A stretch of 64,000 bases of DNA, taken from positions 124,001 to 188,000 of the IMG/VR virus record IMGVR_UViG_3300025141_000020. The stretch is one strand, 5' to 3'. Positions 21,254-62,655 of this stretch are shown here, in pieces; position 1 is the stretch's first letter, and each line of letters starts with the position of its first letter. The translations under genes were made by a program, and so were the position numbers. The notes below the pieces were generated by a model, which was not told where the DNA came from, searched no databases, and saw only the letters and a list, made by a program, of their open reading frames with translations.

Positions 21254-21841
21254 TTAAACTTTTGAAGCTGTTACATTGTCACCAATATAAAACTGATTAC
21301 TTCCTTCTAGTCCTTGCCACATTGCCTGACGTACATCTGTTGCTTCATCAAAAACAACTTTAATTTTTAACGTATAGTAATTTGGGTAGGATATGTATAA
21401 CCCATTTTGTGCCATCTCCTCTTCATCTAATAATGCTCTTGCTACATTTGTTTTAACCGTTCCAGCTTCCGACTTTAGTATCATCGCTACATTACCTTCA
21501 GTTATATATGCATCATCAACTGGTAAGTCATAACCTCCAGCCTCAAGACTATAATAATTAGTTTTATGTCTTCCACCTACTGTACCTGTTATTTTTAAAT
21601 TCTTTGAGCTGGTATCGTAAACAAATAAATCTCTAGGTAGTCCATTCAGTAAGTTACCACCTAGGTTTCTCTCTACACCTGCTTCCGGGTCCGCCATTAC
21701 GTCTACATCGATTTCTATTTCTGGTTTTCTGTCCTCAACTTCAGTTAATACTGATGTAATTCGGTTATCTTTAGACTCTACTAAATGTAGCCCTCTAATC
21801 CTGTTCTTTTCTTCTTCTGTTAAACTAAATATATTTTTCAT
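21254..21841 (-). CDS. Hypothetical late protein with putative capsid-targeting leader
   Basis: MKNIFSLTEEEKNRIRGLHLVE...VLTE; late motif at 21855. Confidence 0.6.
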   Translation of the reverse strand: MKNIFSLTEEEKNRIRGLHLVESKDNRITSVLTEVEDRKPEIEIDVDVMADPEAGVERNLGGNLLNGLPRDLFVYDTSSKNLKITGTVGGRHKTNYYSLEAGGYDLPVDDAYITEGNVAMILKSEAGTVKTNVARALLDEEEMAQNGLYISYPNYYTLKIKVVFDEATDVRQAMWQGLEGSNQFYIGDNVTASKV

Positions 21842-23400: not shown

Positions 23401-25197
23401 CTATCTAAGTTCTCTAACATCAAACGTTCTAACTCCGTCAACAGTGATTCTTCCGTAGAATCTATTGTTCACCATTTTCTTAGCGTATCTAGTCATGATA
23501 CCTTTGATTGGTGTAAAGTTGAATGGGTTATACATTGTAGGAGTTAACTGTAATGGTACATACGGTGCGTAAACGTACCCAGTATCCAATAAAGATGTTC
23601 CTTTATGTCCAATTAACACTTGGTTAGCTGGGAAGTAAGGGTCTCTATATACAGTAAATCTTCCTGATAATGTTCCAATTTTCTCAATACCCATATTGTA
23701 TTGGTCTTGGTCCGCTGCTGCGTTAGAAACGTGGAAGTATTCCAAGTCATCAAATATCGCAGAAACTTCAGAAGAACATACAATCCAGTTAGCCCCACCT
23801 CTTAAAGTAGACTTGTGGATTTGAGCTGAAATTTGGTTAACCGCTGTGATTAATGTTTGGTTCCAGTCTTTTTGAGTATATGGAGCTTGACCAGCTGAGA
23901 ATCTCTTCCAACCGTTGTAGTCCCATCTTAAATCCCAAGCTGCACCTTTTCTAAGGTCTCTTAAGATTTCTCTATCAATCTCTGCAGCAACTTCTTCAGA
24001 TAATAAAGCTGTTAATTCAGCTTCAGCATCTATGTTGTGGAATGCAGAAACGTCTTGTGCAAGTTCTGGTGACCATTGAGCTCTTAATTTTCTTTCACTT
24101 ACAGAAACTGTAACACCTTGAAGGTCGAAAGAAACTTCTCCCATATCTTCTTCAAATTCTAATGTAGCGTATTGTCTCCATTCTGCATTGAACTCAAAGT
24201 TTGCACCAGTTCCAGTCATACCAACATAACCATCAACTGAAGTACAACTAATACAAGCTGGACAAGAAGTATCAACCTCTAAATAGATATCTCCATTTGC
24301 GTCACACGTATCAGCTCTATCTACAATACCAAAACCGTATTTCTGTGTAACAACACGGAATAGGATTGGTGTTTGTGTTCCATACCCTAACGTTGAAGCT
24401 GCAATCTGATTACTTGTAGTTGCCGTAACAGAGTCACAACAAGATAAAATGTTAGCTGTAGTTAATTGTAATGAAGATAAGAAATCTTCTGTATCTTGCT
24501 CATTTCCATCAGGCCCAGTTAAAGTACCAACACCTGTTTGTGAGAAACCAGATAACTTAACAATAACACCTCTAGTACAAACTGTTACATCTCTTTGACC
24601 ATCACTTAATGCTGGTGGAACTGCTCCATTCCAGATAACCTCTACAGTACCTGCCGTTACGTTAGTGTATTTACCTCTAGAATAATCATAAGTACCATTA
24701 TCCATTTCTTGTGGTGAATTACCTGCATAGTAAGCGTCATATAGATTTCCTGTCGCTGCTGATACTGGATTAGCGTTGTTTGGATTTCCTGTTGACCCCA
24801 TTGGTGCTCCGTGAGTACCTGTACCAGGAGGTCCTACCTCTGTTCCTGCTACTACAGTTCTAGGTGTAATTTTAGGTACGAAGTAGAACAATTTACCAAT
24901 TGGTAAGTTCATAGCTTGTACAGAAACGATATCGTTAGCTAACAATTTCGAGAATACTCTTCTAATGATTGGAAATACAACCGTTTCGAAGGACCCTGAA
25001 TCACCAGCCGTCGTTGCTTCGTTTATTAAATTTGTTGCTTGGTTTTCATATAACTGTGCAACATTTTCTTTGACATGCCCTTTAAGTCCATCTAAGAACC
25101 CAAGACCATCCCATTTTTTTAAGGTATCTTCCTTGATAACTTTAAGGTGTTTTAAACCTATGTTACCAACCATACCTGATTCTAATAGTGCTCCCAT
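23401..25197 (-). CDS. gp23: Major capsid protein, T4 gp23-like, with an enlarged Cys-rich insertion
   Basis: VSVQAMNLPIGKLFY, RKLRAQWSPELAQDV, HNIDAEAEL, EIDREI, YAPYVPL, GIMTRY. Confidence 0.97.
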   Translation of the reverse strand: MGALLESGMVGNIGLKHLKVIKEDTLKKWDGLGFLDGLKGHVKENVAQLYENQATNLINEATTAGDSGSFETVVFPIIRRVFSKLLANDIVSVQAMNLPIGKLFYFVPKITPRTVVAGTEVGPPGTGTHGAPMGSTGNPNNANPVSAATGNLYDAYYAGNSPQEMDNGTYDYSRGKYTNVTAGTVEVIWNGAVPPALSDGQRDVTVCTRGVIVKLSGFSQTGVGTLTGPDGNEQDTEDFLSSLQLTTANILSCCDSVTATTSNQIAASTLGYGTQTPILFRVVTQKYGFGIVDRADTCDANGDIYLEVDTSCPACISCTSVDGYVGMTGTGANFEFNAEWRQYATLEFEEDMGEVSFDLQGVTVSVSERKLRAQWSPELAQDVSAFHNIDAEAELTALLSEEVAAEIDREILRDLRKGAAWDLRWDYNGWKRFSAGQAPYTQKDWNQTLITAVNQISAQIHKSTLRGGANWIVCSSEVSAIFDDLEYFHVSNAAADQDQYNMGIEKIGTLSGRFTVYRDPYFPANQVLIGHKGTSLLDTGYVYAPYVPLQLTPTMYNPFNFTPIKGIMTRYAKKMVNNRFYGRITVDGVRTFDVRELR

Positions 25198-25231: not shown

Positions 25232-26758
25232 TTATAATTTAGACATTAAGTCTTTCATTCTACTAAATTGAGGGTTTTCATATACTTTTGATTCCAAAAG
25301 TTTTCCGCCACTCCCACTAGTAGATGATTTAGTAATTTTTCTTTCAACAGCTTCAGAAATAGTTTTGGTTTTATCCTTAACTTCTTGTGAAAACTCTTGT
25401 CTGATTACCTTATACAACCCTTTAGATTCCTTCAATGTTTTAACATTGTCGAAACGCTTTAAGATGTTGATTTTCTCCTGCTTAGTAGTTGAATGTTCAG
25501 TGAATACTCTGGTAACGTAAGCAAGGTTAGAATTAAACACACCCACTTCATTCAATTTATCTTTAAAAGTAATTAATGCTTTTTTATACTCAACATTTTT
25601 TGATTTTAAAGAGTCTACTTCTTCTTTAAGAAGATTGTAGGACTTTCTTATACGACTTTCACCTAGGTTAGCTTTTCTTGGTCTACGAGATTCTCTTTGT
25701 TTCCCCCATTTACCTTGTCCAGCCATTCTAGAAAATGAACTATTCGGTCCAGCTTTTAATCTACTAGTTTCCTCTATTTCACCTTCCATTTCATAATCCT
25801 TATAATGCCCATCGACATCACCAGATTTATGACCCTTAGTTCTTTTGTACTCATCTTTCTTACTACCCCAAGTTTCTTCAACTTCACCTTCAACATCATC
25901 GCCTTCTCTATGTAACATACCTAAAGATTCGTCTTCTCTATCATCATAACCTTGTTCACCTCCAGATAATCGATGTAAAGCATCTGGTGTTTCACCATAA
26001 TGTTTTCTCATCCCTTCTCTTTCATGTCTTCTATCACCATAAGATTGTCTTTCGTCCATTTCCATTGAGTCGTCTGTTTCGTCTAACTCATCGTCATATG
26101 AAGATAAAGCTCTTTCTGATTCAGGAGCATCTACGCCCATTACACCAGTTTCGTCAAAATCTTCGTCCATCTCGATTTCATAGACTACTTCGTCAAGTCC
26201 TTCTTCGTTATCAGTAGTTTCGTCTTCAGTCTCAACCACTTCTTCTGTGTCATTAATGGATTCTTCTTCTCTCATGATTTTTGATTTTTTAGATTGTTCC
26301 AACTTAATTAGGTATTCAGTATCCGTATTTGTATCGGTCAAATCGATTTCATTATCGTCCTGTTGGATAATAATTCCGTCTTCGTCACCCATGGCTTTGA
26401 ATACTTTTAATACTTCAGCATCTGATGCTAATGTTAAATCTAGAGGTGGTAACTCTAGTGATACTTCGTCGTCTTCAGTATCGTCCTCCACATCAAGTCC
26501 TAAATCGAGGTCCATTGTCGGTTCTTCTAAATCCACCGTATCGGCTTCATCTTCCAAATCTTCAATATCTAAATCGATTTCAACTTCTTGTTCGTCTTCT
26601 TGCTCTTCTAGGTAATCATTTTCGCTTAATGATTCTTTTACTAATTCATGAATTTCTTCCTTCATAGTTGATGAAAGTATTTCTTTTGCATTAGACCTCA
26701 TAGTTTCTTCTAACTGTTCGGCCTCGAGCAACGCTTTTTCTAAGATTGTTTTACTCAC
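25232..26758 (-). CDS. Prohead core scaffold protein (gp22-like, long and acidic)
   Basis: Lies between protease and MCP; highly acidic; coiled-coil C-terminus (LNEVGVFNSNLAY); GTG start. Confidence 0.75.
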   Translation of the reverse strand: MSKTILEKALLEAEQLEETMRSNAKEILSSTMKEEIHELVKESLSENDYLEEQEDEQEVEIDLDIEDLEDEADTVDLEEPTMDLDLGLDVEDDTEDDEVSLELPPLDLTLASDAEVLKVFKAMGDEDGIIIQQDDNEIDLTDTNTDTEYLIKLEQSKKSKIMREEESINDTEEVVETEDETTDNEEGLDEVVYEIEMDEDFDETGVMGVDAPESERALSSYDDELDETDDSMEMDERQSYGDRRHEREGMRKHYGETPDALHRLSGGEQGYDDREDESLGMLHREGDDVEGEVEETWGSKKDEYKRTKGHKSGDVDGHYKDYEMEGEIEETSRLKAGPNSSFSRMAGQGKWGKQRESRRPRKANLGESRIRKSYNLLKEEVDSLKSKNVEYKKALITFKDKLNEVGVFNSNLAYVTRVFTEHSTTKQEKINILKRFDNVKTLKESKGLYKVIRQEFSQEVKDKTKTISEAVERKITKSSTSGSGGKLLESKVYENPQFSRMKDLMSKL

Positions 26759-28866: not shown

Positions 28867-28891
28867 AAGTATGGTTTATATATAAATATAC

Positions 28892-30727
28892 CTAATCCTT
28901 TAATAAGGTGTCTACTTCAGTGTTAATCTTATCTATGTTCTTATTACTTTTATTGATAGCGTCTTTTAAACCCTCTAAATCCATACCTTTTCTTTCCATT
29001 AATAATGGAAGTCCTTTTTCTACATTATATCCCTCTGCAGCTGGTTCAGGTATTTCTACATCTGTTTCTGCTGTGTCTGTTTCACCACCGGTATCATCAC
29101 CCATACCAAAATCCATTCCAGCATCTGAGTCATCACCAACATCTGCACTATCATCTGTAGCCCCTTCTTCACCTTCTTTTTTAGGTATGCCATATAAATT
29201 ATCAATATTACTAAAGATTCCAGTTTTCTGTATTACTTCTGCCGTTTTTTCTAATTCACCAGCTAAAGCTTTTTCAAATCTTTGTTGTTGTAAATCTAAT
29301 TTAATTTCTTCATCACTCATACCTAAGATTTCTTTCTTAGCCCAAGTAGTAGATACAGCCTGTAGGCCATTTCCTGGGTCAGTTACAGCGTCTCTATATA
29401 ACGCGATTCTTTCTTTCCATTGTTCTATTTTTAATAGGTCTGTTTGTGTAGATGGGTTAGATAAAGCTAATTTAAAATTAGTAAGTTCATCCTGAAAGCC
29501 TAAAACATATAAATGTATTATAGCAATTTTATTTAATTCTGCCACAATAGCTTTTTGTATTCTATTAATTGTTCTTGCAAATCTAATGTCTAGTAAAGCT
29601 AAATTTTTACCTTCACCGACAACTTCCTCAAAACCAAGAAAGGCTTTAGGAATTCTTAATGATGCAAGTAACTTTTTTTGGATGTATTCTATATCTGCTA
29701 TTTCACTTAAATTTGTAGCTCCTGGTAAGGTATCTATCGGACTTGCCGCAGCTGGGTCTCTAACCGGTATAAAATAATCTTGGTCTACAGCCATCTGATT
29801 CATTCTTAAGTCCACATTTCCATTCTGTGGGTCTACAACAGCGTCTCTTTTAAATTTATTAGCTACTTTTTGGATGTATGCTTCAACATCTTTATCGTCC
29901 ATGTTACCCACAAATACTTTAAATACTCTTCTTTCAGGAGCTCTTGACGTTCTATACACCAACATTGCGTCTTCCGCTAACAATAACTGTTTCCAAATTC
30001 TTCTTGCTTTTTCCAACATAGAAGTACCATAAGGAAGTCTTCTATCATCACCTAATATCCTGAAATGTGCTATTTCCCATGTATTAAACTCTAACTCTTT
30101 TTCTCTCCACTTAAATTCAACCTTAGGTTCTTTTTCATCTTGTTTTTCTCCATGTAATGTAAAATAGTTAGATTGGTCTCCTCTTTCCATTTCAATATTT
30201 GGTAACTGGTTACATCCTATAATACCTTTTTCTGGGTCAATTTTAAGATACACAAAATTGTCACCATATTTACATGTGTTTCTAACCCACATAGCTAAAT
30301 TAGTATTGACGTCCAATATATTATTAAATAAATCTGCTAATATAGATTTTATTCTTGCTGATTCGGAAAAAATTGTTAATGTGTGACCTTTTTCTGATGG
30401 TGTTGTACATTCCTCAGCATATATATCTAAAGCTGCGGATATTTCTGGTGTAAATTCCATAGATTCATAATCGTAATATGAAGCTAAACGAGTTGGTTCA
30501 TAATATATGGATTTAGTATATAGTTCATTATCTACTTTTTGCCATTGGTTGGCAAGATAGGCGGCTTGTTGAAATTCTAACTTTTTTTCGTCGTAATCTT
30601 GTTTATTTGTAGTTTTAAGAATTTCTTGTGACCCTACTGTAAATTGTTGTATAGAACTCTTTGGTGCTGTTGGTCCTCCTGTCCCAAAAAGCTTACCTAA
30701 TCTTTGATATATTGTGAATTTTGCCAT
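28892..30727 (-). CDS. gp20: Portal protein (gp20-like)
   Basis: RLPYGTSMLEKAR, EDAMLVYRTSRAPERRVF, DYFIPVR, IDTLPG, LRIPKAFL, DIRFARTI. Confidence 0.95.
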   Translation of the reverse strand: MAKFTIYQRLGKLFGTGGPTAPKSSIQQFTVGSQEILKTTNKQDYDEKKLEFQQAAYLANQWQKVDNELYTKSIYYEPTRLASYYDYESMEFTPEISAALDIYAEECTTPSEKGHTLTIFSESARIKSILADLFNNILDVNTNLAMWVRNTCKYGDNFVYLKIDPEKGIIGCNQLPNIEMERGDQSNYFTLHGEKQDEKEPKVEFKWREKELEFNTWEIAHFRILGDDRRLPYGTSMLEKARRIWKQLLLAEDAMLVYRTSRAPERRVFKVFVGNMDDKDVEAYIQKVANKFKRDAVVDPQNGNVDLRMNQMAVDQDYFIPVRDPAAASPIDTLPGATNLSEIADIEYIQKKLLASLRIPKAFLGFEEVVGEGKNLALLDIRFARTINRIQKAIVAELNKIAIIHLYVLGFQDELTNFKLALSNPSTQTDLLKIEQWKERIALYRDAVTDPGNGLQAVSTTWAKKEILGMSDEEIKLDLQQQRFEKALAGELEKTAEVIQKTGIFSNIDNLYGIPKKEGEEGATDDSADVGDDSDAGMDFGMGDDTGGETDTAETDVEIPEPAAEGYNVEKGLPLLMERKGMDLEGLKDAINKSNKNIDKINTEVDTLLKD

Positions 30728-49280: not shown

Positions 49281-51653
49281 TTATTTGGTGTTTAGTACAT
49301 TTATTAGACCTTCATATATGTTTGGGCTTGGGTTCCTTCCTTTTTCTTCTTTTTTATCTTCTTTTTTATCTTCTTCATTCCATTCGTTTATTTGGTCTCT
49401 AACAGCACCAAACCCTCCCTCCTGAAACGCTTTCGTAAGGTCTTTTATTATATTTGAGAATTCTAGCTGAATGTCTTTGATTGCTGCACCACTTCTCTTA
49501 CCTACATCCTCATGGTCAGGGTCTGTCGTAAAATAAACTTCGGGACATTTACCCCCTGTTTTATTACAACATTGTCCTTTGTTAAAGTCTTCAGAAGTTA
49601 GTCCGTTTAAAAACTCTTGGAAGTCGTTGGACCACTTATTAGTAGCGTCTCCTTCTGGTTTATAATCATTACACATTGCTAACCTAGATAGATTATCTGT
49701 ACTAATTAGAGCTTCTGGTTTGTAACGACCATATACTGTTTGACCACGTTCATTTTCTCTTGTTTCTGCGTATTCTGGCCAGAAGTCTGTCAACATTTTT
49801 GCTGCTTTATCCAGAGAATCATCGTCCGAGTCCGAACCAACTACCCACGACTTCTCCCCAATCCAATCCAACGCGTCACCTTTATCTGTTGTTACCAGAT
49901 TTATCAGCAAACCTATTAGTGGGATTTTCTTATTCATTAACCCTAAATCATCTATAAATTTAGTTTTTCCAATTTTATTATAAAAGAAAACTATTTGTGA
50001 CATTGCTAAAACTGTTGGTGCGGCATCTATAACCGCTTCAATACTCCAGTCATCCACACCAGTTATCCATTTAAGGAATGTGTTTGATTCAAATACCCAA
50101 GTATCACTATATCTTGCCATCTCACCTATAAGTTCCTTTCTAAAAGCTTCTCTATCTTTGTTTGGTATTCCAGCTATTGTTTTTTTGCCCGCGTCATCTT
50201 CTATCGCATATTTGTTAATTAATTCTGTCATGTCATCAGATTCATCAAAATCTCTAACAACCATATAACCTCTAAGGTAGACATGTAATTTGTCAGCTAG
50301 TGCTTCTGCTTCAGAGTCTGATAGTCCACCCAGTTGATAAATAGCGTCTTTATTCCCTTGGAATTTTTTATATAGTTGTTCGGTTGCACCAGCTATTGAT
50401 TTATTACTAGCTGTCAAGGTCATGAGTGATTGGATAAGTTGGTCTATAAGGACAGCTCCAGTTATCCCTAGTGCTGTATACATGAGCCCTTTTTTTGTTT
50501 TTGGGATAATTTTAAGTAAGGTACCTCCAACAGTAAATTTGTCTTTTAACATGTTTCTCAACATTGATATGAGGTCAGTGGTTGCGTTCTTTTCTCCACC
50601 TAACAGAGTTCTAAGTGCGGCATCGTCTAGTGTACCATTTTTAGCTGCTCTACGTGTTGCTGCATCAGAGTTTTTCCATATTAATTTAATAATGTTATCT
50701 TGTTGGTCGGACCTTGATAGTATCCCTATCAAATCATCAAGAACTTCAGGTGGTATCACTCTGTCTTTTTCAATTGCCCTACCTATAAGAGCTACTAGTT
50801 CATCTACCGACCTTGGTAACGTGTGAGTGGACTGACTTGCTAATTCCGTTAATTCTTTTTGTAATGATTTAAGGTTAGTAACTCCATTTGTTGGGTCATC
50901 TATCCAAGCCTTAAATACTTTTTGTTTAGTTCCACTAGCACCTGCTGATTTTGTTTTCCATATAAAGGCTTTCAAATCCTTAGTAAAAGTCTCTAACCAT
51001 GTGGTTGATTTAAGTGTAGTCAAGTCAACTGCTTCTTTTTCTGCCTTTTCAATTGCTTCTCTTTCTGCTTTCTCAATTGCTTCTCTTTCTGCTTTCTCAA
51101 TTGCTTCTCTTTCTGCTTTCTCAATTGCTTCTCTTTCTGCTTTCTCAATTGCTTCTTTTTCTAACTTTTCCGCAATTTCTTTTTGTACTTTTGCTTCCAA
51201 AAGTTTCATTTGTTTGCTGAATGAGGTAGCAAATCCATCTCCATTTTTTAAAAAATATGGCATCCAGGCTAAAAAATCATCTAACTGCTTTCCACTAAGA
51301 GACCCATCTGCCACCTTAGTCATTACCTTTTTTATAGTTGCCATGTCATAGAGTTCTCCGTTTCTACCAACTAAAGCTATAATAGTTTCTCCATCAGCAG
51401 CAAATTTAACATTAGCTTTTCTTGTCATTCTATCGAATACGTTAGCTACTGCTTGTGAACCTTCCTTTCCTACAAGTTTTATCATCCTGTCTGCTAATGC
51501 TTGTGAGATTTCTTTTCCTCCTTTTTTAGTGAATAGTTTTTGGAAAAATTTAACTATATCATCTCTTTGTTCTGTTATTAGGTTATTAGTAGGTTGTTTT
51601 AAGCCCATTATTTCGCGGGCTCTTTCTAATTCGTATATAATTTTTTTATTCAT
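49281..51653 (-). CDS. Large putative capsid-internal (ejection-type) protein with leader, EKAEREAI repeats and a hydrophobic segment
   Basis: Start MNKKIIYELERAREIMGL...LITEQ; central TM-like GLMYTALGITGAVLI. Confidence 0.55.
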   Translation of the reverse strand: MNKKIIYELERAREIMGLKQPTNNLITEQRDDIVKFFQKLFTKKGGKEISQALADRMIKLVGKEGSQAVANVFDRMTRKANVKFAADGETIIALVGRNGELYDMATIKKVMTKVADGSLSGKQLDDFLAWMPYFLKNGDGFATSFSKQMKLLEAKVQKEIAEKLEKEAIEKAEREAIEKAEREAIEKAEREAIEKAEREAIEKAEKEAVDLTTLKSTTWLETFTKDLKAFIWKTKSAGASGTKQKVFKAWIDDPTNGVTNLKSLQKELTELASQSTHTLPRSVDELVALIGRAIEKDRVIPPEVLDDLIGILSRSDQQDNIIKLIWKNSDAATRRAAKNGTLDDAALRTLLGGEKNATTDLISMLRNMLKDKFTVGGTLLKIIPKTKKGLMYTALGITGAVLIDQLIQSLMTLTASNKSIAGATEQLYKKFQGNKDAIYQLGGLSDSEAEALADKLHVYLRGYMVVRDFDESDDMTELINKYAIEDDAGKKTIAGIPNKDREAFRKELIGEMARYSDTWVFESNTFLKWITGVDDWSIEAVIDAAPTVLAMSQIVFFYNKIGKTKFIDDLGLMNKKIPLIGLLINLVTTDKGDALDWIGEKSWVVGSDSDDDSLDKAAKMLTDFWPEYAETRENERGQTVYGRYKPEALISTDNLSRLAMCNDYKPEGDATNKWSNDFQEFLNGLTSEDFNKGQCCNKTGGKCPEVYFTTDPDHEDVGKRSGAAIKDIQLEFSNIIKDLTKAFQEGGFGAVRDQINEWNEEDKKEDKKEEKGRNPSPNIYEGLINVLNTK
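51050..51145. repeat. 24-bp tandem repeat x4 exact, with degenerate flanks (encodes EKAEREAI)
   Basis: CAATTGCTTCTCTTTCTGCTTTCT at 51050, 51074, 51098, 51122. Confidence 0.97.
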
Positions 51654-51664
51654 AATTGTTTTTT

Positions 51665-52117
51665 TTACCATAGAGGGTTGGATTTACCTCTACTTGGTTG
51701 GTAGCTGTCTGCCCATTTACTATTTATTATTTGGTTTGCGCTGCCTCTGGTTATTCCACTTTCCCAAACACCGACTGATGCTGTACCAGCACCCGCTCCA
51801 TCATCAGATTCACCTGTTCCTGCCCCATCATCCTGCTCCATAAATTCTTCTGGGGCATAACTATCTTGTGGACCATCACTATAAAAATCATATGCTTGGT
51901 CTTCTTTAGAGTAGTTGGTTTCTGGTTCTGTAAACCCTTCTTCATCTAGTTCTGGTTCAGAACCTAAAGCTCCTTTACTAGTAAAGTTATATTCACTTGC
52001 ACCATCTGTATCCGCGTAACCACCTTGTAAGCCAGACATAATATCTTCATTTAATGGTTCACCATCAAACATTATTTCCTTAACTCTATTTATATTTTCT
52101 TGTAACGACTCACGCAT
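51665..52117 (-). CDS. Acidic late protein with EINR-type leader
   Basis: MRESLQENINRVKEIMFDGEPLNED; late motif at 52128; C-terminal WESG..RG.AN / W....RGK.NPLW. Confidence 0.6.
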   Translation of the reverse strand: MRESLQENINRVKEIMFDGEPLNEDIMSGLQGGYADTDGASEYNFTSKGALGSEPELDEEGFTEPETNYSKEDQAYDFYSDGPQDSYAPEEFMEQDDGAGTGESDDGAGAGTASVGVWESGITRGSANQIINSKWADSYQPSRGKSNPLW

Positions 52118-52144
52118 ATCTATACTATATAAATATAAATACCG

Positions 52145-52495: not shown

Positions 52496-52912
52496 CTAAA
52501 GTCTACGGGATTTTAACCAAAATATTTCTCTTCCGGCTCTAGTTTCTAACGCTCTTAATTTTTGTTTAGACTTTTTCATATCTAAGTCTTTGTTGGTGTC
52601 TAAATCCAGCATTTGATATTCGTTAAATTCTAATATGTCCGCAAGTAATTCTTCAGTATATTGTACTCTGTCTTGTAATTGTTCTATTTGGTCTTGTTGT
52701 AAGCCCATAATCTCTTCTGGTGATAAGAGTTGTTCTAACTCGTCCTCAATACCACTGATATCATCTTCAGCGTCATAAACCTCCTCCCCTTCATCATTAA
52801 TCATATTAGCTCTATCTAAAACTCTAAGAACCTCATCTTCACCGGTCTCTTGTTCTAGTATGTTCTTAAGCACACCATCTAATTGTTCTTCGGAAATTTT
52901 AATTCTTTTCAT
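52496..52912 (-). CDS. Acidic late protein with ISExQL-type leader
   Basis: MKRIKISEEQLDGVLKNILEQ; late motif at 52925. Confidence 0.6.
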   Translation of the reverse strand: MKRIKISEEQLDGVLKNILEQETGEDEVLRVLDRANMINDEGEEVYDAEDDISGIEDELEQLLSPEEIMGLQQDQIEQLQDRVQYTEELLADILEFNEYQMLDLDTNKDLDMKKSKQKLRALETRAGREIFWLKSRRL

Positions 52913-52946
52913 CTTTGTTTTTATTATAAATATAACCTAATATTTA

Positions 52947-55430: not shown

Positions 55431-55739
55431 TTAACTAATGTAATATTTTAATTTTTCTTCGTATAAGTATCCTGGTTGTACTCCCTGCATAGATTCTTGC
55501 ACTTCACCATTTTTGATTATCGTTACGTTTGGAATCCCTCTTATACCATATCTTGCGGCTAATGATTGCATTTTATCAACATTAACTTTTAATATGTTAT
55601 TTGGGTATTGTTCTTTTAATTTATCTATTGTTGGTGTTAACATCCTACATGGCCCACACCATGGAGCCCAGAAATCTACTAACACAACTTCTTCACTTTT
55701 TAGTTTTTGGTCAAAAACCTGTTCACTAATTATATCCAT
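55431..55739 (-). CDS. trxA: Thioredoxin
   Basis: VLVDFWAPWCGPCRML, KVNVD, YGIRGIP. Confidence 0.97.
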   Translation of the reverse strand: MDIISEQVFDQKLKSEEVVLVDFWAPWCGPCRMLTPTIDKLKEQYPNNILKVNVDKMQSLAARYGIRGIPNVTIIKNGEVQESMQGVQPGYLYEEKLKYYIS

Positions 55740-55921: not shown

Positions 55922-56398
55922 ATGAAAAAATTAACCACAATATTATTATTACTCCTTTCCATAATTTCTTATGGACAAAATAATGTAGATATGCAAGCGT
56001 TTAATAAAATAAATGAATATCGTATATCCAATGGGGTGTCTGCTATTGTCCTTGACAGTACTATATGGAAAGGGGTGAATTATCATAGTAACTATCTAAT
56101 AGATAATGGTTATCCGTATAATTACCCATTAGATAATCCTCATGATGAACTGATTTTAGCTCGTCCTTCTGACAGATTATTTCAATATAATTTCGTTATG
56201 AATGGAGTTATTAGAGAGTGTATTACGGTATTTACCTGTGTTCCGGATATGGAATTAACAACGGATTGGGTTATTAAGAACTTTGATAAGTCCACTCCTC
56301 ACAAAGAAGCTGTTTTAGACCCTAGGGTAATTAGGGGTGCAATTTCCTTAACTTTTTCTGGTGATTTATGTTATGCTACATTAATTGTAGCAGAATAA
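55922..56398 (+). CDS. Secreted CAP (SCP/CRISP) domain protein, paralog 1
   Basis: Signal peptide ...SYG-Q; INEYRISNG, HSNY, H....RL, E, STPHKEAVL. Confidence 0.75.
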   Translation: MKKLTTILLLLLSIISYGQNNVDMQAFNKINEYRISNGVSAIVLDSTIWKGVNYHSNYLIDNGYPYNYPLDNPHDELILARPSDRLFQYNFVMNGVIRECITVFTCVPDMELTTDWVIKNFDKSTPHKEAVLDPRVIRGAISLTFSGDLCYATLIVAE

Positions 56399-56401: not shown

Positions 56402-57988
56402 CTATTTAGCAGCTGTTTTAGTAGTAATAGGGATACCACATTTATTTAATGTTAATAGTTTTGTGTTGGCTAAATCCCCTCTTTTCATTTTAATAGTAGG
56501 TTGTCCATCATAAACTTCCCCATTATAATTTTCTATAGTAACCCATGGAACATCACTATGACTACCCGAAAACCCTAAATTTAAATTTACATCCCCGTAA
56601 AATGCACAAGTATTATTAAAATTCGGAGGGGCAAACCCGGAAGGAGCGGGTGATACACCAAAACAAGGAGGTACTGATTCACCGGCGGACCCTACTTTTT
56701 TCATTACGACTAAAGCTTGCATTGAAAGTATTATCTCGTCCTCTGTTTCTGCCATTATTTGTGTAGCTTGTTCTGGGGTAACAGTAAATGTTACAGCTCT
56801 ACTACCACCAAATTTACCATCATCTATACCGTCCCTATCTCTTGCGGCATATGTTGAAGCTAACATTTGTCTTGGTTTTAGGTCAAACTGATTTCTCCAA
56901 TCAGGTATTTCTCCAATCATTTTTTCTCCCTCTTCATTAGTAAACTCCATAGGTTCTTGTGGACCATAACGTATTGCCTTTCTTAACATTTTTCCTATGT
57001 CACTTTTCTTTAATACATATCCATTCTTGAGTTCAGTTCCAACATCATTTGCTGTTACGTATGCCGCAGGAAGGTCATAATATGGTATGGAATTAGCTGC
57101 TTCAGGGGTAAATACATCTAAAGCCCCATTATTTAGGTTTGCTATTCCTAAACTAACACCATTCATTTTAACATCAAAAATTGCTTCATCACAAAAATGA
57201 TTATGTTGTCCTTTATTGGTATAGTATCCGATAGTACATTTTAGGTGTACTAAGCAGTCTTCTTCAACTTCATAGATTTTTTCAATAAAAGAGAATACTA
57301 AAGTGATTATTAAAGCTTGTCCTTTTTTAGGTGCTTTAGAGTCTTCATTGTTATCATCTGTAGCTCCTCCAGTATCAATAATAAAACCTTCTGGATTTGT
57401 AGATAATTTACTAACATCTATTTTTTCCTCTTTAAACAATGGTATTATTGCCTCGATAAATCTCTTAGCTCTCCTAGTAGCTAAATCTTTGTTAGCTTCT
57501 ATATTTTCACTTTTTTCGGTAAAAAAAGTTCCTGGGTATGAGCCTGCTTTTTTTAATTCTAACCATTTTTTCCAATCACCTTTATAACCATCTTTCGCCG
57601 CTAATTCTTCCCATCTTTCATCAGTAACCTCCACTAGTTTTTTATTGTCCTCACCTACGAAATCATTTCCTATTTCTGGTATCATAGGTTTCCTCCAGTA
57701 ATTACTTGCTCCCGCTTTAACGTCAATAGAGTCTAACTGTAATTTACCGGCTTTTAGTAGGGCTGCGTGTTGGGTGTTACTATTAATTTCTTTGATAATA
57801 CCTGCGACTACAGTGTTTATGAATGGTGAAGGGTCGTCCACACCTGTTGGGTAATTATATTCATACCTTAAGGGTATTTCTATATCTATATCGGAGACTA
57901 GTTTTCTTATATAAACCATTTCTTGTTCTCTAATAAGACCCATAATCTCTCTAGCTCTGTTAACCTCAGATAAAATATTCTTTTTCAT
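56402..57988 (-). CDS. Late protein with EINR-type leader and OmpA_C-like domain
   Basis: MKKNILSEVNRAREIMGLIREQ; late motif at 57993; AGASN...ANKDLATRRA. Confidence 0.55.
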   Translation of the reverse strand: MKKNILSEVNRAREIMGLIREQEMVYIRKLVSDIDIEIPLRYEYNYPTGVDDPSPFINTVVAGIIKEINSNTQHAALLKAGKLQLDSIDVKAGASNYWRKPMIPEIGNDFVGEDNKKLVEVTDERWEELAAKDGYKGDWKKWLELKKAGSYPGTFFTEKSENIEANKDLATRRAKRFIEAIIPLFKEEKIDVSKLSTNPEGFIIDTGGATDDNNEDSKAPKKGQALIITLVFSFIEKIYEVEEDCLVHLKCTIGYYTNKGQHNHFCDEAIFDVKMNGVSLGIANLNNGALDVFTPEAANSIPYYDLPAAYVTANDVGTELKNGYVLKKSDIGKMLRKAIRYGPQEPMEFTNEEGEKMIGEIPDWRNQFDLKPRQMLASTYAARDRDGIDDGKFGGSRAVTFTVTPEQATQIMAETEDEIILSMQALVVMKKVGSAGESVPPCFGVSPAPSGFAPPNFNNTCAFYGDVNLNLGFSGSHSDVPWVTIENYNGEVYDGQPTIKMKRGDLANTKLLTLNKCGIPITTKTAAK

Positions 57989-58003
57989 ATATTATAAATA
58001 GTA

Positions 58004-58110
58004 GAAACATTAGTTAAGTTATACCGTATAATATAATACAATTAACTTGGTCGTTTAACTTAAATTTATTATCTTTGTAGTATGAAAAAATTAATCACAG
58101 TATTATTATT
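58004..58110 (+). repeat. About 107-bp imperfect direct repeat (copy 2 at 58618-58724) containing the promoter and CAP signal-peptide start
   Basis: GAAACATTAGTTA...CAATTAACTTGGTCGTTTAACTTAAATT...ATGAAAAAATTA recurs at offset 614; promoters CTTG-N20-TATCTTTG (58046-58077) and CTTG-N20-TACCTTTA (58660-58691). Confidence 0.9.
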
Positions 58111-58609
58111 ATTCCTTTCCATATTTTCTTATGGTCAAACTAAGTTAGATTTACTTATTTTCGAAAAAGTGAATAACTATCGTACACAAAATGGTTTATC
58201 TCCGTGGGCATGGGATAATAGGGTTTTCGTGGTGGCTGAAAAACACAATAATTATCAACTAAGTGTAAGTGATATTTCACATGACGAATTAGTTGATGTT
58301 GTAGGTCATGAAGAAATTAATAGGTTAGCTCATCGTTTTGACGCTATTTTTACTAATTGGTTACGTTGTGGGGAAAATATTGCTGTTGTAAACACATCTG
58401 ATATGACATTAGAAAAAATTGCTAATACAACATTAGAAATGTGGATTGATTCCCCACCGCATAATAAAATACTTTTGTCTGCAACTAAATATTGTGGTGG
58501 AGCTATAAGCTCTCACCACAGTACAACCTGGTCACGTTCTAAATATGCTTCTCACAATAGTTGGGTGTACGTTACCTTAAATTTGTATGGTGGTTCTATA
58601 TATAACTAA
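58082..58609 (+). CDS. Secreted CAP-domain protein, paralog 2
   Basis: Signal peptide ...SYG-Q; VNNYRTQNG, HNNY, SHDE, GENIA, WIDSPPHNKIL. Confidence 0.85.
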   Translation: MKKLITVLLLFLSIFSYGQTKLDLLIFEKVNNYRTQNGLSPWAWDNRVFVVAEKHNNYQLSVSDISHDELVDVVGHEEINRLAHRFDAIFTNWLRCGENIAVVNTSDMTLEKIANTTLEMWIDSPPHNKILLSATKYCGGAISSHHSTTWSRSKYASHNSWVYVTLNLYGGSIYN

Positions 58610-58695: not shown

Positions 58696-59223
58696 ATGAA
58701 AAAATTACTCACAGTCTTATTAACTATTTTAACTTTCTGTTCATACGGACAACAACGTATTGTAGAAGCAGAAAAAATCATTTTTAGAATGGTAAACGAA
58801 TATAGAGTGTCTCAAGGGTTAGACGCTGTTGTATGGTCTGAAGACGCGTATAATGCAGCGTATCACCACTCATCTTATATGTCTAATAAAGGTGTCCCTT
58901 ATGCACACACTGAAACTGTTGATGTGGATGGTCATGAGGAGATAAGTAACCCTCAGATGAGAATAGCGAAGTATTGTAGCCCTTCTTCTTGGGGTACGGA
59001 ATGTATGGCGGGTCTTCCTTTATTATCGTGGACCGTAGAACCTTGGGATTTAGAGAAAGCGTGTCGTACAGTAGTAAATAATTGGATTAATTCTCCCGGA
59101 CACAAAAAAGCTATATTATATGATAAAGAAGGTAACGGTAACCTTAGTATTGGAGCTGTGAGCGTAATTAAGTTAAATTATTGTGAGAGTTCAATCCCGG
59201 TATTAGTCTTGGTGAACAAATAA
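58696..59223 (+). CDS. Secreted CAP-domain protein, paralog 3
   Basis: Signal peptide ...SYG-Q; VNEYRVSQG, HSSYM, HTE, E, WINSPGHKKAIL. Confidence 0.85.
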   Translation: MKKLLTVLLTILTFCSYGQQRIVEAEKIIFRMVNEYRVSQGLDAVVWSEDAYNAAYHHSSYMSNKGVPYAHTETVDVDGHEEISNPQMRIAKYCSPSSWGTECMAGLPLLSWTVEPWDLEKACRTVVNNWINSPGHKKAILYDKEGNGNLSIGAVSVIKLNYCESSIPVLVLVNK

Positions 59224-59233: not shown

Positions 59234-62071
59234 TTATGCTGGTTTGGTTAGTTGCTGTGAGGCATCCTTACCACATTTAACATTTAATCCCCACGCTGTA
59301 CCCCCTAATGGAGCTATTACCTGTAACCAAGCAGTATCTGTACCTTCAATTTTATTAAAGGTTATCTCACCATTAGGTCCTATCATACCCTCATCAAAAC
59401 CTAATGATTCCAGCTCTGCATTAAATTCTTTTGTTCCACCAATATTATTAGAAGCATACTTTCCTCCAGTACGTACATTCCACTCCCACTCCTTCTTAGA
59501 TATGTTAGCGGATTTTATTAATTGTTCTATTCTGTTTTTATTAACATTTATTTCATTTAGTATAATCTTAAGTTCATTTTCTAAATCTTGTACTACCTTC
59601 TTTTTTCTATTCGCGATTTCATTTTCCTTCACTGGTATCTCCTCCTTCATGGCCTCCAATTCATTTTTCTGGTTCTTTAACTGTATCGCTTGTAGTTTTT
59701 TCATTGTGATAAAGAACTCTTTAAGGTCATCTTTTTTGAATCCCGTTTGTTTTTTGTTCCTGTTATCCACCAATTTATTATAACCAGTGCTTTTCTGTAC
59801 TTTCGACTTATTGTCATATGGGTAAAGTTTGAAAAAATTGGTAAACCACTTTTCATCTAGTTCTCCCGCTGCTTTTAAATTATAATAAGCATTGCCAAGG
59901 TATTGAGCTCTCTTGTATTCTTCTTGAGTTTCATTGCCTCCATCTCTCTTACGTACCAACTTGTCTGACACATCATCATCTTTATGTACAAACCAGTAAA
60001 CATTAGGTACGTTTCTGTTAGGGTAATCCAGATAGTGGGTGATATACGAGCCCCATTTCTTGCCATATTTTTTATACTTTGAATCCCCGCCCAGACCTAT
60101 AGGAATACTAAAACCATACTTTTCTATTTTCTCATTAATCTTTTCTATTGATAACTTTAGGTTTTCCTCTTCCTGCTCTAATTTAGCTGTTATTTTTGCT
60201 GCTTGCTCTTCTGTAGTTGAATCTATAATTGCTTGTGCTTCCGCGTTTTCAGTTTCTAACTTTTTCACCTCCTCTTGTGCCTTTTTTAATTTTGGTTTGA
60301 CTAGGTCTAACTCTTCTTGAGACATTTTTTTAAATAAGTTTGAGACAAACCCTTCCTCCCCAGTATCTGGGTTTGAACTAACGTATTCTTTGTCATCATA
60401 AGTTAAAATAAACTTATCGGGAACAGTATACGCGTCAAACTGTAAAGTTATCTTTCCTACTCCAGCTCCTAAAGGTAATTCCATTCCATCACCTGGATAT
60501 ATTTTATACTCAGGACCTTGGGCTTGCCCTCCTTCTTCTGGTTTAAACTTTTTCTTACAAAAAGCTGGTAACGCTTCTAATACTTCTTGAATACCTGTGG
60601 CTTTAAAGGAGATGTTCATCTTTTGTGCTTTAGTATAATCATCGTGGTCAGCTCCTTTGTTTCGGTCCCAGGGTACAGTTCCTAAAGTAAGAATGGGTTT
60701 TGGGATAGTAACATTATCAATACCAGCCTGGGCTAATGCATTTTCTAAATATGTCTTTACTGCTTCTGTTCGTTTTTCCGCTAACCACATATTTCTTTCT
60801 TTTGCGTCTTTAGTCTCCCAGCCAGGCATTCCCATTTCTTTTGCTTTCTCATCTTGGATTGGTACAAGTGAGGCTCCACCTTCTAGTACAATCTCAAATG
60901 TTATGCCTTTTAAATCAGGAACACTAAAAAAAGTTACCATTCTTTTTGCTAGGTCTTCGACCGCGTCTAGAGACTTATCTTTTAGTTCATATACTGCCGA
61001 TGCGAATTTTTGTCCTATATTAATTGGCGGTAACTCGGTTTTTATTATATCAACTATTCTTTGCTTTTTACCGTTTCTAATAACAACATCACCCTTTTGG
61101 TCTTGTTGTTCCATAAGAGGTTTTAAACCCATTATTTCACGTACTCTATTAATTTCATTTAAATAGTGACTTTCTTCTACTTTGTATGCTTCATTTATTT
61201 CTACGTACTTTCCGTCTTTAACTAGATAAAGTATTTTATTCTTATTATTTCGGTAATATTTACCTTCCTCTGCGTTAGATACACTAGGTGTAGCTCCGAA
61301 TGGGTTTTCTTTAGTCCCTTTTTCTTCCTCTCCTGTACGTACATTTTCTCCTGCTCCTATTGTGTCATCTTTGTCAGACTCGTCTGAGTCAGACGTGGAT
61401 TTTACATTGGCCTTATCATACTTTTCTCTTTCCTCCTTGGATTGATTCTTTTTTCTCACTTCGTCACACCACTTCCATATATCCGCTTCGGTTTCTTTAT
61501 CATATGGATTTTTCGGGTTATCCCCAGGAGTGTACATATGGTTCGCGTCCTTTGCCCATGGACATACTTTATCTCCTCCCCTCAGTGCTAACTGCTCTTG
61601 TTTCAATTTAGATAGGGTGCTGCCTAAGTTTTGGTCTAGGTTATATTTCTCTCCTTCGTCAAAATTCCCTGAAAGAACTAATAAATCTACAAATTTTTCG
61701 GGTTTATTCTCATTATCAGAATCTTTAAATGCAATTTGTGTTAAAGTATCTAATTCATCTAGACCCATATATCTTGCCTCACCCGTCAAATACTTTATTA
61801 CACTGGATTCATCGACAAATATTCTATCCAACTTATTAACTAATTTCGCGAACATCCTAAGTTCATCGTCTCCAAATACTGGAGGTGTCTTCTTTCTATC
61901 ACTATCCTGTATCCAAGCACTAGTTTTTCTCCATTCCACACCAGATTTAAGTATGTTATAGATATCCTCTCTTCTTTTCTTGCCACCCCATAATCTGCCC
62001 CACCAATCTTCATTCAAAAGGCCCATTATTTCTTTGGTTCTATTAATTTCTGTTAAAATTTGTTTTTTCAT
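59234..62071 (-). CDS. 945-aa putative capsid-internal polyprotein with two EINR-type leaders and an OmpA_C-like domain
   Basis: N-terminal MKKQILTEINRTKEIMGLLNED; internal YLNEINRVREIMGLKPLMEQ; EGGAS...RNMWLAEKRTEAVKTYL; coiled coils. Confidence 0.6.
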   Translation of the reverse strand: MKKQILTEINRTKEIMGLLNEDWWGRLWGGKKRREDIYNILKSGVEWRKTSAWIQDSDRKKTPPVFGDDELRMFAKLVNKLDRIFVDESSVIKYLTGEARYMGLDELDTLTQIAFKDSDNENKPEKFVDLLVLSGNFDEGEKYNLDQNLGSTLSKLKQEQLALRGGDKVCPWAKDANHMYTPGDNPKNPYDKETEADIWKWCDEVRKKNQSKEEREKYDKANVKSTSDSDESDKDDTIGAGENVRTGEEEKGTKENPFGATPSVSNAEEGKYYRNNKNKILYLVKDGKYVEINEAYKVEESHYLNEINRVREIMGLKPLMEQQDQKGDVVIRNGKKQRIVDIIKTELPPINIGQKFASAVYELKDKSLDAVEDLAKRMVTFFSVPDLKGITFEIVLEGGASLVPIQDEKAKEMGMPGWETKDAKERNMWLAEKRTEAVKTYLENALAQAGIDNVTIPKPILTLGTVPWDRNKGADHDDYTKAQKMNISFKATGIQEVLEALPAFCKKKFKPEEGGQAQGPEYKIYPGDGMELPLGAGVGKITLQFDAYTVPDKFILTYDDKEYVSSNPDTGEEGFVSNLFKKMSQEELDLVKPKLKKAQEEVKKLETENAEAQAIIDSTTEEQAAKITAKLEQEEENLKLSIEKINEKIEKYGFSIPIGLGGDSKYKKYGKKWGSYITHYLDYPNRNVPNVYWFVHKDDDVSDKLVRKRDGGNETQEEYKRAQYLGNAYYNLKAAGELDEKWFTNFFKLYPYDNKSKVQKSTGYNKLVDNRNKKQTGFKKDDLKEFFITMKKLQAIQLKNQKNELEAMKEEIPVKENEIANRKKKVVQDLENELKIILNEINVNKNRIEQLIKSANISKKEWEWNVRTGGKYASNNIGGTKEFNAELESLGFDEGMIGPNGEITFNKIEGTDTAWLQVIAPLGGTAWGLNVKCGKDASQQLTKPA

Positions 62072-62081: not shown

Positions 62082-62564
62082 TTAATTCCACATTACTGTT
62101 ATAGTTTTATCGTCTAAATCAACGTGTAGGTTTGTAGGTAATATAGTGTGGTATCTTTCATTATCTTTTTCATCATAATAATACCACATATCTGGGTCAT
62201 CACTTTTAAATCCACCCATGTCATCTACATTTAATTCAATTTCTTTTTCCACCTCTACCTTAGTGTAGTCTTCGTCATAAATCTCAATCGCTCCTTTTAT
62301 CACTACACTAGTCGTGTAAATGCTTATATCTTTAATACCCCAACTTCTTACGTCTAAATCAAACCTCCAATTTACAACACAATCTAGATATGATATGTCC
62401 ATATCTCGGTCTTTATATTCCGGGAAATAGTTTTGTAGTCCAGAAAAATCTATATCATCTACTTGTGTGCTAAATGAGTTTGGGTCGTCGTCCCATTGTT
62501 CTGTTATAACCTTATCTATTATTTTAACTAATTGGTCTTGTTTAAGTGATATTTTTTTTCTCAT
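62082..62564 (-). CDS. Acidic late protein with ISxxQL-type leader
   Basis: Likely start MRKKISLKQDQLVKIIDKVITEQ at 62564; late motif at 62602. Confidence 0.6.
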   Translation of the reverse strand: MRKKISLKQDQLVKIIDKVITEQWDDDPNSFSTQVDDIDFSGLQNYFPEYKDRDMDISYLDCVVNWRFDLDVRSWGIKDISIYTTSVVIKGAIEIYDEDYTKVEVEKEIELNVDDMGGFKSDDPDMWYYYDEKDNERYHTILPTNLHVDLDDKTITVMWN

Positions 62565-62655
62565 AGTATTAAAAGCTAATTTGCTGGCTTGCTTGCATAT
62601 AATAAATATAAGCATTATACTATAAATATTAATATATTTTTACTATAATTAATAT

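What the first reader, a model, noticed from the sequence alone, without database searches (positions are those of the whole stretch)
59234..62071. Polyprotein with a second, internal copy of the capsid leader
The type-A leader recurs about 300 aa into this ORF (around 61116-61170: ...VEINE|AYKVEE|SHYLNE|INRVREIMGLKPLME|QQ) with no stop or separate start. The downstream half resembles the standalone leader-bearing gene 56402..57988. This suggests two cargo genes fused into a polyprotein that the prohead protease splits into separate mature proteins inside the head. The internal motif is seen directly; the processing is inference.
Basis: partly seen in the sequence, partly recalled or inferred. 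Interest (0 to 1): 0.7.

Follow-up and report, generated by a model that had tools for sequence, protein, structure and literature searches.

The report
Two-cargo phage protein with internal leader
A 945-residue protein of a marine T4-like jumbo phage carries, about 300 residues in, a second conserved copy of a short tag that otherwise sits only at the very start of phage proteins. This makes it a likely two-in-one precursor cut apart by the head protease, but the cutting has not been shown.

Summary
ORF 59234-62071(-) encodes 945 aa. It has the motif E-I-N-R-x-(K/R)-E-I-M-G-L at aa 8-18 and again at aa 306-316 (window 61124-61156).

The internal copy is not an artefact. Contigs of two sequencing runs span it without a difference. 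All 10 fused homologues found keep it. It is the best-conserved segment (78% mean identity, against 24% for the linker before it).

Elsewhere the motif is strictly N-terminal (18 of 18 IMG/VR hits). Both halves also exist as separate genes in related phages, each with its own N-terminal leader. So a fusion of two leader-bearing genes is well supported.

Three interchangeable leader families (A, B, C) all end in [ILV]-x-E-(Q), the T4 gp21 cleavage pattern. The phage encodes an S77 prohead protease and gp23/gp20-type head proteins. In P0001 only the leader-flanking [LI]xE sites are conserved.

Cleavage into two mature proteins, and head targeting, therefore remain inference. They are coherent with the evidence but rest on no proteomic data.

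The claimed likeness to gene 56402-57988 holds only for the leader plus an OmpA-like fold just after it.

Verdict: a new variant of the T4 capsid-targeting-sequence/propeptide theme. Moderately high interest.

The parts
59234..62071 (-). Whole ORF (P0001, 945 aa, 107.8 kDa): leader - domain A - linker - leader - domain B
62009..62071 (-). N-terminal type-A leader, aa 1-21, with [LI]xE sites at E8 and E21 (LNE|DWWG)
   Evidence: E21 conserved 8/8 and E8 7/8 homologues
61457..62008 (-). Domain A, aa 22-205, helical (model pLDDT about 70-83), function unknown. Found as a standalone leader-bearing gene in other phages (P0019, P0020)
61175..61456 (-). Variable acidic/lysine-rich linker, aa 206-299. 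Mean identity 24%. Deleted in P0007-P0009. Its last roughly 40 aa (KYYRN...GKYVEI hairpin module) recur in another leader-bearing gene (L029 6263-7096)
61109..61174 (-). Internal type-A leader, aa 300-321 (core NEINRVREIMGL), flanked by LNE306 and LME321|Q. Most conserved segment of the protein (78% mean identity). Low-confidence free helix in the model
60596..61108 (-). Start of domain B, aa 322-492: OmpA/Pal/MotB-like fold (GGASLVP ... RNMWLAEKRTEAV)
   Evidence: no Pfam hit
59234..60595 (-). Rest of domain B, aa 493-945: beta-rich module (FDA..VPD.F), long coiled coils, C-terminal beta module (ITF.K..G....LQV.AP.GGT.W). These modules recur in many other metagenomic proteins
56402..57988 (-). 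P0002, 528 aa: type-A leader (aa 1-21, IRE|Q), then an OmpA-like fold, then an unrelated C-terminal domain. Homologues carry type A, B or C leaders
62082..62615 (-). Upstream gene with a type-B leader (MRKKISLKQDQLVKIIDKVITEQ; likely true start at M18). Syntenic in relatives. TATTTATA motif 6 nt upstream of the ORF start, so it probably heads the operon that includes P0001
51665..52117 (-). 150-aa gene with type-A leader (PLNE24|D)
49281..51671 (-). 796-aa gene with type-A leader (ELERAREIMGL ... LITE|Q)
52496..52912 (-). 138-aa gene with a type-B leader and a partial internal A-like stretch (EEIMGLQQDQ)
21254..21841 (-). 195-aa gene with a type-C leader (EEKNRIRGLH...VLTE|V), the leader type that replaces type A at the N-terminus of P0007-P0009
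26869..27570 (-). Prohead protease, Peptidase_S77 (T4 gp21 family): the proposed processing enzyme
23401..25197 (-). Major capsid protein, T4 gp23 family. Candidate [ILV]xE sites VKE44, LYE51, INE60 lie near the position aligned to the T4 gp23 maturation site
25232..26701 (-). Very acidic 489-aa protein between protease and MCP. Candidate scaffold/core protein by position and composition only
   Evidence: no family hit
28892..30727 (-). Portal protein, T4 gp20 family

Best explanation
P0001 is a natural fusion of two cargo genes of a roughly 300-kb marine T4-like jumbo phage, probably of Flavobacteriia. Each half keeps its own 15-21-residue leader.

The leader family is proposed to work like the T4 capsid targeting sequence. 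[quoted passage not shown]

In P0001 the protease would cut after E21 (and perhaps E8) and after E306 and/or E321. That would give two mature proteins in 1:1 ratio inside the head:
- domain A, aa 22 to about 306, about 33 kDa;
- domain B, aa 322-945, about 71 kDa, which starts with an OmpA-like module.

These products would later be ejected into the cell envelope.

Shown: the motif, its conservation, its otherwise N-terminal position, the split homologues, the leader swapping, the S77 protease, and the OmpA-like fold.

Inferred: head targeting, cleavage, ejection, and peptidoglycan binding.
For: 1. The internal leader is kept in all 10 fused homologues (P0001, P0003-P0011). It is the most conserved segment, while the linker before it decays or is deleted.

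2. The same leader is N-terminal in 18 of 18 IMG/VR hits, with the Met 6-7 aa upstream, and each hit is followed by [IL]xE within about 10 aa.

3. Both halves occur as separate leader-bearing genes. P0012 is a syntenic standalone domain B.

4. Leader families A, B and C all end in [ILV]xE(Q). They replace one another in front of orthologous domains exactly at that boundary. Examples are P0012 against P0014/P0056 against P0068, P0001 against P0007-9, and the P0002 homologues.

5. P0001 has 12 [LI]xE sites (13 expected). Only E21, E306 and E321 (8/8) and E8 (7/8) are conserved.

6. The genome has a T4-type head module with an S77 protease. S77 is found on 6 of 10 leader-carrying IMG/VR fragments, which are 13-82% complete.

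7. T4 gp21 cuts after L/I-X-E. T4 internal proteins share only a 10-19-aa CTS that is removed (PMC9026906 sections 2.5-2.6; PMC3012670).

8. Leader genes share a start-proximal TATTTATA element with the protease, portal, TerL and core genes. 36 of 78 hits lie 45 nt or less upstream of a start, against 1.5 expected.

9. Both leaders are low-confidence, unpacked helices in the models.
Against: - There are no virion proteomics or N-terminal data for this phage or any relative. No cultured relative was found.
- The [LI]xE sites are part of the conserved motif itself, so their conservation cannot be separated from conservation of the leader for some other function.
- Gln at P1' is not the usual T4 pattern.
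- About 20 genes in this contig carry a leader, some beside tail genes, which is many for head cargo.
- Some domain-B relatives in phage contigs carry a hydrophobic N-terminal segment instead (P0038, P0110, P0114). This hints at another route to the envelope.
- The protease-plus-leader complex prediction gave no answer.
- The MCP maturation site could not be placed unambiguously.
Confidence: 0.5

Rival explanations
1. The leader is a generic but non-cleaved module, for example an amphipathic helix that docks proteins to a common partner, assembly site or membrane. P0001 is then a stable two-domain protein whose internal copy is a second docking helix or an inter-domain element. The fusion history is the same, but there is no polyprotein processing.
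For: The leaders are predicted helices. About 20 genes carry them, some next to tail sheath genes. Conservation of the flanking [LI]xE can be explained as part of the motif. The complex prediction gave no support for protease binding (this is not evidence against binding).
Against: Three sequence-unrelated leader families substitute for each other in front of the same domains and all end in the same [ILV]xE(Q). That fits a common processing site better than a common docking surface. The position is strictly N-terminal elsewhere. The internal leader is preceded by a disposable linker.
Confidence: 0.25
2. The leaders are recognition tags for another machine: an export route to the periplasm, or the phage's own Hsp70/ClpB-type chaperones. 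The OmpA-like cargo would act in the envelope of the producing cell rather than being packed in the head.
For: Domain B and P0002 begin with OmpA-like folds, which normally work in the periplasm. Some relatives in phage contigs have a hydrophobic N-terminal segment instead of a leader. The phage encodes Hsp70 and a ClpB-like AAA+ protein, followed directly by a type-B leader gene.
Against: The leaders are charged and amphipathic, with no hydrophobic core and no known export signal features. An internal export signal in a 945-aa protein makes little sense. The association with S77/T4-type head modules and the shared promoter-like motif with head genes fit virion cargo better.
Confidence: 0.12
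3. Assembly or sequencing artefact: there are really two genes, with a missed stop or frameshift at the junction.
For: None found.
Against: Contigs of two runs span the junction with 0 differences, and a third run overlaps it. Ten homologues from independent assemblies have the same continuous frame. No in-frame start codon precedes the internal leader; the first is M314, inside the leader core.
Confidence: 0.01

Closest known systems
Capsid targeting sequences (CTS) of T4 internal proteins IPI/IPII/IPIII and other gp21-processed propeptides (PMC9026906; PMC3012670; Mullaney and Black 1996, as cited there)
   Same: A short N-terminal peptide is shared by otherwise unrelated, fast-evolving proteins clustered in a plastic locus. 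It ends in L/I-X-E. The phage has a gp21-type S77 protease and gp20/gp23-type head proteins. The cargo is thought to be ejected into the host.
   Different: There is no evident sequence relation to the T4 CTS. The leaders are longer (15-35 aa) and come in three interchangeable families. They sit on about 20 genes per genome, many of them large (up to 945 aa) and many with OmpA-like modules. Here a leader also sits inside a protein, which I do not know to be described for T4. Function is untested.
Propeptides of giant-phage head and ejection proteins cleaved by the prohead protease (phiKZ, 201phi2-1, SPN3US gp245; PMC10052503, PMC5694885)
   Same: These are jumbo phages with many head-internal proteins. 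Cleavage is after Glu in a three-residue motif. Some propeptides are short (20 and 24 aa in SPN3US gp225 and gp45). Long propeptides carry multiple cleavages.
   Different: The motif there is A/S/G-X-E, not L/I-X-E. Those propeptides are not a shared, swappable leader family. In SPN3US all reported substrate cleavages except the protease's own remove N-terminal propeptides; none releases two mature cargo proteins from one chain.
OmpA/Pal/MotB peptidoglycan-binding domain (PDB 5wtp, 3td3/3td5, 5u1h, 4b5c)
   Same: Fold of aa about 340-490 of P0001 and of the post-leader region of P0002: Foldseek probability about 1.0, TM by target 0.5-0.64 for P0001. The N-x-x-L-A-x-x-R-x-x-x-V helix motif is kept.
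   Different: No Pfam PF00691 hit. The GxTD loop reads GGASLVP, so the Asp that contacts diaminopimelate in OmpA-like domains (my recollection of the 3td5 work) is Ser. There is no signal peptide or membrane anchor. Peptidoglycan binding is untested.
Viral polyproteins cut by a virus-encoded protease (general principle)
   Same: One ORF would give several mature proteins in fixed stoichiometry, separated at short protease motifs.
   Different: This is known mainly from RNA viruses and retroviruses. Here it would be a two-unit cargo precursor in a tailed dsDNA phage, processed inside the prohead, and it is only inferred.

Membership tests
T4-type capsid targeting sequence / gp21-processed propeptide (functional class) | Short N-terminal peptide shared by otherwise unrelated proteins of one phage | tested here: met
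   Type-A leader on 4 genes here and on diverse proteins in 18 IMG/VR loci. Types B and C are on many more.
T4-type capsid targeting sequence / gp21-processed propeptide (functional class) | Peptide ends in the protease motif L/I-X-E | tested here: met
   All type-A leaders end in [IL]xE. Types B and C end in [ILV]xE(Q). In P0001 only these sites are conserved.
T4-type capsid targeting sequence / gp21-processed propeptide (functional class) | Phage encodes a gp21-family (S77) prohead protease and a T4-type head | tested here: met
   PF03420 at 92.5 bits, PF07068 at 247 bits, PF07230 at 266 bits. S77 is on 6 of 10 leader-bearing fragments.
T4-type capsid targeting sequence / gp21-processed propeptide (functional class) | Sequence similarity to the T4 CTS | not tested
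   No tool-derived T4 CTS sequence was compared. From memory there is no evident similarity beyond the MK start and the I-x-E end.
T4-type capsid targeting sequence / gp21-processed propeptide (functional class) | Protein present in virions with the leader removed | not testable with these tools
   No proteome and no cultured relative.
T4-type capsid targeting sequence / gp21-processed propeptide (functional class) | Leader sufficient to carry a foreign protein into the prohead | not testable with these tools
   Needs an experiment.
OmpA-like peptidoglycan-binding domain (PF00691) | Characteristic alpha/beta fold | tested here: met
   The top 50 PDB Foldseek hits of model m5ac396d77fe5 are all OmpA/Pal/MotB-like. 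The Atlas structure hits agree. P0002's model gives similar hits. The models are of modest confidence (domain pLDDT 67-90).
OmpA-like peptidoglycan-binding domain (PF00691) | Match to the family HMM | tested here: not met
   No Pfam hit at E <= 0.01.
OmpA-like peptidoglycan-binding domain (PF00691) | Ligand-binding Asp and Arg | tested here: inconclusive
   The Arg of N..L...R is invariant (R434). The position of the Asp loop reads GGASLVP and is invariant. The residue mapping was done by eye, not by structural superposition.
Protease-processed polyprotein | One ORF holds two units that exist as separate genes elsewhere, separated by a protease motif | tested here: met
Protease-processed polyprotein | Separate mature products observed | not testable with these tools
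   Needs mass spectrometry or gels.

The most novel reading that the evidence does not exclude
A clade of roughly 300-kb marine T4-like phages may use an undescribed, modular cargo-addressing system. It would consist of three interchangeable leader families (A, B, C), each ending in [ILV]-x-E-Q, that send about 20 diverse proteins per genome into the prohead for processing by the S77 protease. Many of these proteins carry OmpA-like envelope-binding modules. P0001 would be a natural two-unit polyprotein in which an internal leader serves as a processing cassette, so that two ejected proteins are packed at 1:1.
Probability: 0.4. Interest if true: 0.7.

Novelty: new variant of a known kind. Interest (0 to 1): 0.6.

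Why it matters
If the leaders are capsid-targeting propeptides, leader presence alone gives a sequence rule for reading the injected-protein repertoire of a large, uncultured group of ocean jumbo phages. That would extend the T4 CTS idea from three small internal proteins to dozens of large, modular cargo proteins. The internal leader would be the first natural case I know of in which a tailed phage packs two cargo proteins as one precursor and separates them in the head. The leaders could also serve as portable packaging tags, as the T4 CTS does. If the leaders turn out not to be cleaved, they are still an undescribed, widespread and swappable N-terminal module whose function needs explaining.

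Tried and rejected
- Pfam and PHROGs on P0001 and P0002 found no family.
- blastn and tblastn against cultured phage genomes found no match, using the 7-kb region, P0001, and the 24-aa leader at E <= 10.
- The search for related loci in IMG/VR with P0001 found nothing.
- A literature string search for the motif (REIMGL, KEIMGL, NRIRGLH, NRVREIM) found no paper.
- hhalign of the P0001 family against P0002 aligned only the 18-aa leader. The claimed resemblance therefore had to be tested by fold.
- Complex prediction of the S77 protease with P0001 aa 296-330 gave no answer: score 0.00, controls not run. This is not evidence either way.
- Internal translation start: rejected. There is no in-frame ATG, GTG or TTG between the linker and M314, and no conserved start in homologues.
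- DNA-level or RNA-level conservation of the leader: rejected. The copies differ at synonymous sites, 30 of 51 nt identical.
- Mapping the MCP maturation site onto T4 gp23* gave three candidate [ILV]xE sites (E44, E51, E60) rather than one.
- Cluster look-up for names or accessions of NCBI-held homologues returned no names.
Full report
**Context.** The window is bases 124001-188000 of a 210,568-bp IMG/VR virus contig. CheckV puts it at 66% complete, so the genome is about 300 kb. GC is about 32%. The window holds a T4-type head module:
- major capsid protein, Gp23 family, at 23401-25197(-);
- Peptidase_S77 prohead protease at 26869-27570(-);
- T4-type portal at 28892-30727(-);
- large terminase at 30772-32493(-).

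No cultured phage is close. Signal peptides of neighbouring genes look flavobacterial; this host guess is my inference.

**The observation.** ORF 59234-62071(-) encodes 945 aa (P0001). The motif E-I-N-R-x-(K/R)-E-I-M-G-L occurs at aa 8-18 and again at aa 306-316. With flanks, the second copy spans aa 300-321, window 61109-61174. In the whole contig a leader HMM finds five strong copies in four genes. All lie on the minus strand between window 49281 and 62071, and the other four copies are N-terminal.

The frame is continuous. Contigs of two runs span 60400-61900 with no difference, though these may be the source samples. A third run has two overlapping contigs over the motif. Short contigs that match only the 33-nt leader core and then diverge belong to other leader genes; one continues upstream as an intergenic sequence followed by a start codon and MQKNI. 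The two copies differ at synonymous sites, 30 of 51 nt identical. What is conserved is therefore the peptide, not the DNA.

**Comparative anatomy.** Eight homologues at 41-78% identity, plus P0010 and P0011, share one plan: leader, then helical domain A (aa 22-205), then a variable linker (206-299), then a leader (300-321), then domain B (322-945).
- The internal leader is the best-conserved segment, at 78% mean identity. The linker just before it is at 24% and is deleted in P0007-P0009.
- The N-terminal leader is itself replaceable. P0007-P0009 carry a different leader (EEKNRIRLLH type, here called C). P0004 has an A/C hybrid.

**Split versions exist.** A profile search of 1.84 billion representative proteins found standalone versions of both halves.
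- Standalone domain B: P0012, P0017, P0018, P0021 and P0029 align from their residue 5 to the start of the internal leader.
- P0012 lies in the syntenic position, followed by the same CAP-domain gene.
- P0014 and P0056 have the same mature start but a type-B leader. P0068 and many others have type C.
- Standalone domain A: P0019 and P0020, both with type-C leaders. P0020 ends exactly where the internal leader of P0001 would begin, and its next gene is an unrelated type-B leader gene.

The fusion reading is therefore well supported. The fusion is old, since it is shared by proteins only 41% identical.

**The leaders as a system.** A degenerate DNA scan of IMG/VR for the type-A core gave 19 loci. 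In 18 of 18 that matched at protein level, the motif is N-terminal with the Met 6-7 residues upstream, and it is followed within about 10 residues by [IL]xE. The downstream proteins are unrelated to each other and are 390-800 aa long.

Aligned leaders fall into three families, all ending in [ILV]-x-E, usually followed by Q:
- A: MKKxILxEINRxREIMGL..[IL]xE
- B: MKKVIKLTESQLKRII..V[IV]SEQ
- C: ..SEEEKNRILxLHE.ATK..YL.xEQ

The families replace each other in front of orthologous domains at exactly that boundary. This holds for domain A, for domain B and for the P0002 family.

This contig has about 20 leader genes. In relatives they form runs of 5-8 consecutive genes. In a 78%-identical relative the slot of P0002 holds a different protein with the same leader. 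This is the behaviour described for the T4 internal-protein locus, where diverse proteins share only a capsid targeting sequence (PMC3012670; PMC9026906 sections 2.6 and 3.1).

**Link to the protease.** T4 gp21, the type member of S77, cuts after L/I-X-E. It removes 7-65-residue propeptides, including the 10-19-residue CTS of internal proteins (PMC9026906 sections 2.5, 2.6).
- P0001 has 12 [LI]xE sites, and 13 are expected from composition. Only four are conserved: E21, E306 and E321 in 8 of 8 homologues, and E8 in 7 of 8. These are the sites bracketing the two leaders.
- S77 is present on 6 of 10 leader-bearing IMG/VR fragments. The four without it are only 13-29% complete.
- The 8-mer TATTTATA lies 5-25 nt upstream of starts far more often than chance: 36 of 78 hits, against 1.5 expected. 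It precedes the protease, a core-region gene, the portal and the terminase. It also precedes at least ten leader genes, including P0002 and the gene heading the P0001 operon. This suggests co-regulation with virion genes.
- In both structure models the leaders are low-confidence helices that do not pack on a domain.

None of this shows cleavage. There is no proteome. The sites are part of the motif itself. The protease-peptide complex prediction gave no answer.

**What the cargo looks like.** The model of P0001 has low overall confidence (pLDDT 56). Residues about 340-490 reach 67-90, and their top 50 PDB matches are all OmpA/Pal/MotB-type domains. Atlas structure hits agree.
- Pfam does not see the domain.
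- The usual GxTD loop reads GGASLVP, while N..LA..R...V is kept. Peptidoglycan binding is therefore plausible but open.
- P0002's model also matches OmpA-like domains right after its leader.
- Beyond that the two proteins are unrelated.
- A few domain-B relatives in phage contigs have a hydrophobic N-terminal segment instead of a leader. This fits an envelope site of action and keeps alive a rival route.

**Verdict.** Processing and head targeting are the best available mechanism (about 0.5) but remain inferred. If cleaved as proposed, the products would be about 33 kDa (aa 22-306) and about 71 kDa (aa 322-945), from a 107.8-kDa precursor.

I found no description of these leaders in the searchable literature. 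I rate the finding a new variant of the T4 CTS/propeptide theme.

Noticed in passing
window-wide; e.g. 27584-27591, 28881-28888, 30752-30759, 32498-32505, 52128-52141, 52925-52932, 57993-58000, 62621-62628 (all minus strand): The 8-mer TATTTATA lies 5-25 nt upstream of same-strand ORF starts in 36 of 78 genome hits (1.5 expected). It precedes head genes, putative tail genes and leader-bearing genes. It is a candidate late-promoter-like element, with very short 5' leaders.
   Followed up: partly
38878-40749 (-) and 40993-43035 (+): The phage encodes a full-length Hsp70/DnaK (867 bits) and a ClpB/ClpA-like double AAA+ protein, divergently arranged. A type-B leader gene (43053-44153) follows the Clp-like gene directly.
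   Followed up: partly
58082-58609 (+), 58696-59223 (+), probably 55922-56398 (+): Two or three paralogous small secreted CAP-domain (PF00188) proteins with signal peptides are interleaved, on the opposite strand, with the leader-bearing genes. The CAP gene next to the P0001 homologue is conserved in relatives (L002, L004, L005, L028).
   Followed up: partly
genome 206051-206731 (-), i.e. about 18 kb beyond the window's right end: A 208-aa ORF carries two type-C-like leader motifs: EEKREIRKLYE near the N-terminus and EDEKERMRQLHREASTIKEQ at aa about 107-121. This is a second protein in this genome with an internal leader copy.
   Followed up: no
52496-52912 (-): This 138-aa gene has a type-B leader and, at aa about 74-81, a fragment of the type-A core followed by QQDQ (EEIMGLQQDQ), as after the internal leader of P0001.
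   Followed up: no
35239-36930 (-): This 563-aa ORF begins MGLKP..., the same residues that follow the Met inside the type-A core. The five codons upstream read KKEIK. It may be a decayed or truncated leader.
   Followed up: no
L029 6263-7096 and window 61175-61300 (-): The last roughly 40 residues of the P0001 linker (EEGKYYRN...LYLVKDGKYVEI, a predicted beta hairpin) recur directly after a type-A leader in an otherwise different protein of another phage. It is a small mobile module of unknown role.
   Followed up: no
53468-53893 (-) and 55431-55739 (-): A small signal-peptide protein with a weak outer-membrane beta-barrel match, and a thioredoxin, sit within the leader-gene cluster. The thioredoxin is syntenic in relatives.
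   Followed up: no
beyond the window: genome 188867-202968 (-); L002 1-7209: Two giant ORFs (1740 and 2948 aa) flank the cluster. The homologue of the smaller one in a relative carries PT-HINT/Hint domains.
   Followed up: no
P0038, P0110, P0112, P0114 (loci L030, L031): In phage-like contigs, OmpA-like relatives of domain B have an N-terminal EEGWKE + 13-15 hydrophobic residues instead of a leader. In P0112 this follows a type-B-like leader. It could be a signal peptide or anchor, or a fourth leader type.
   Followed up: partly
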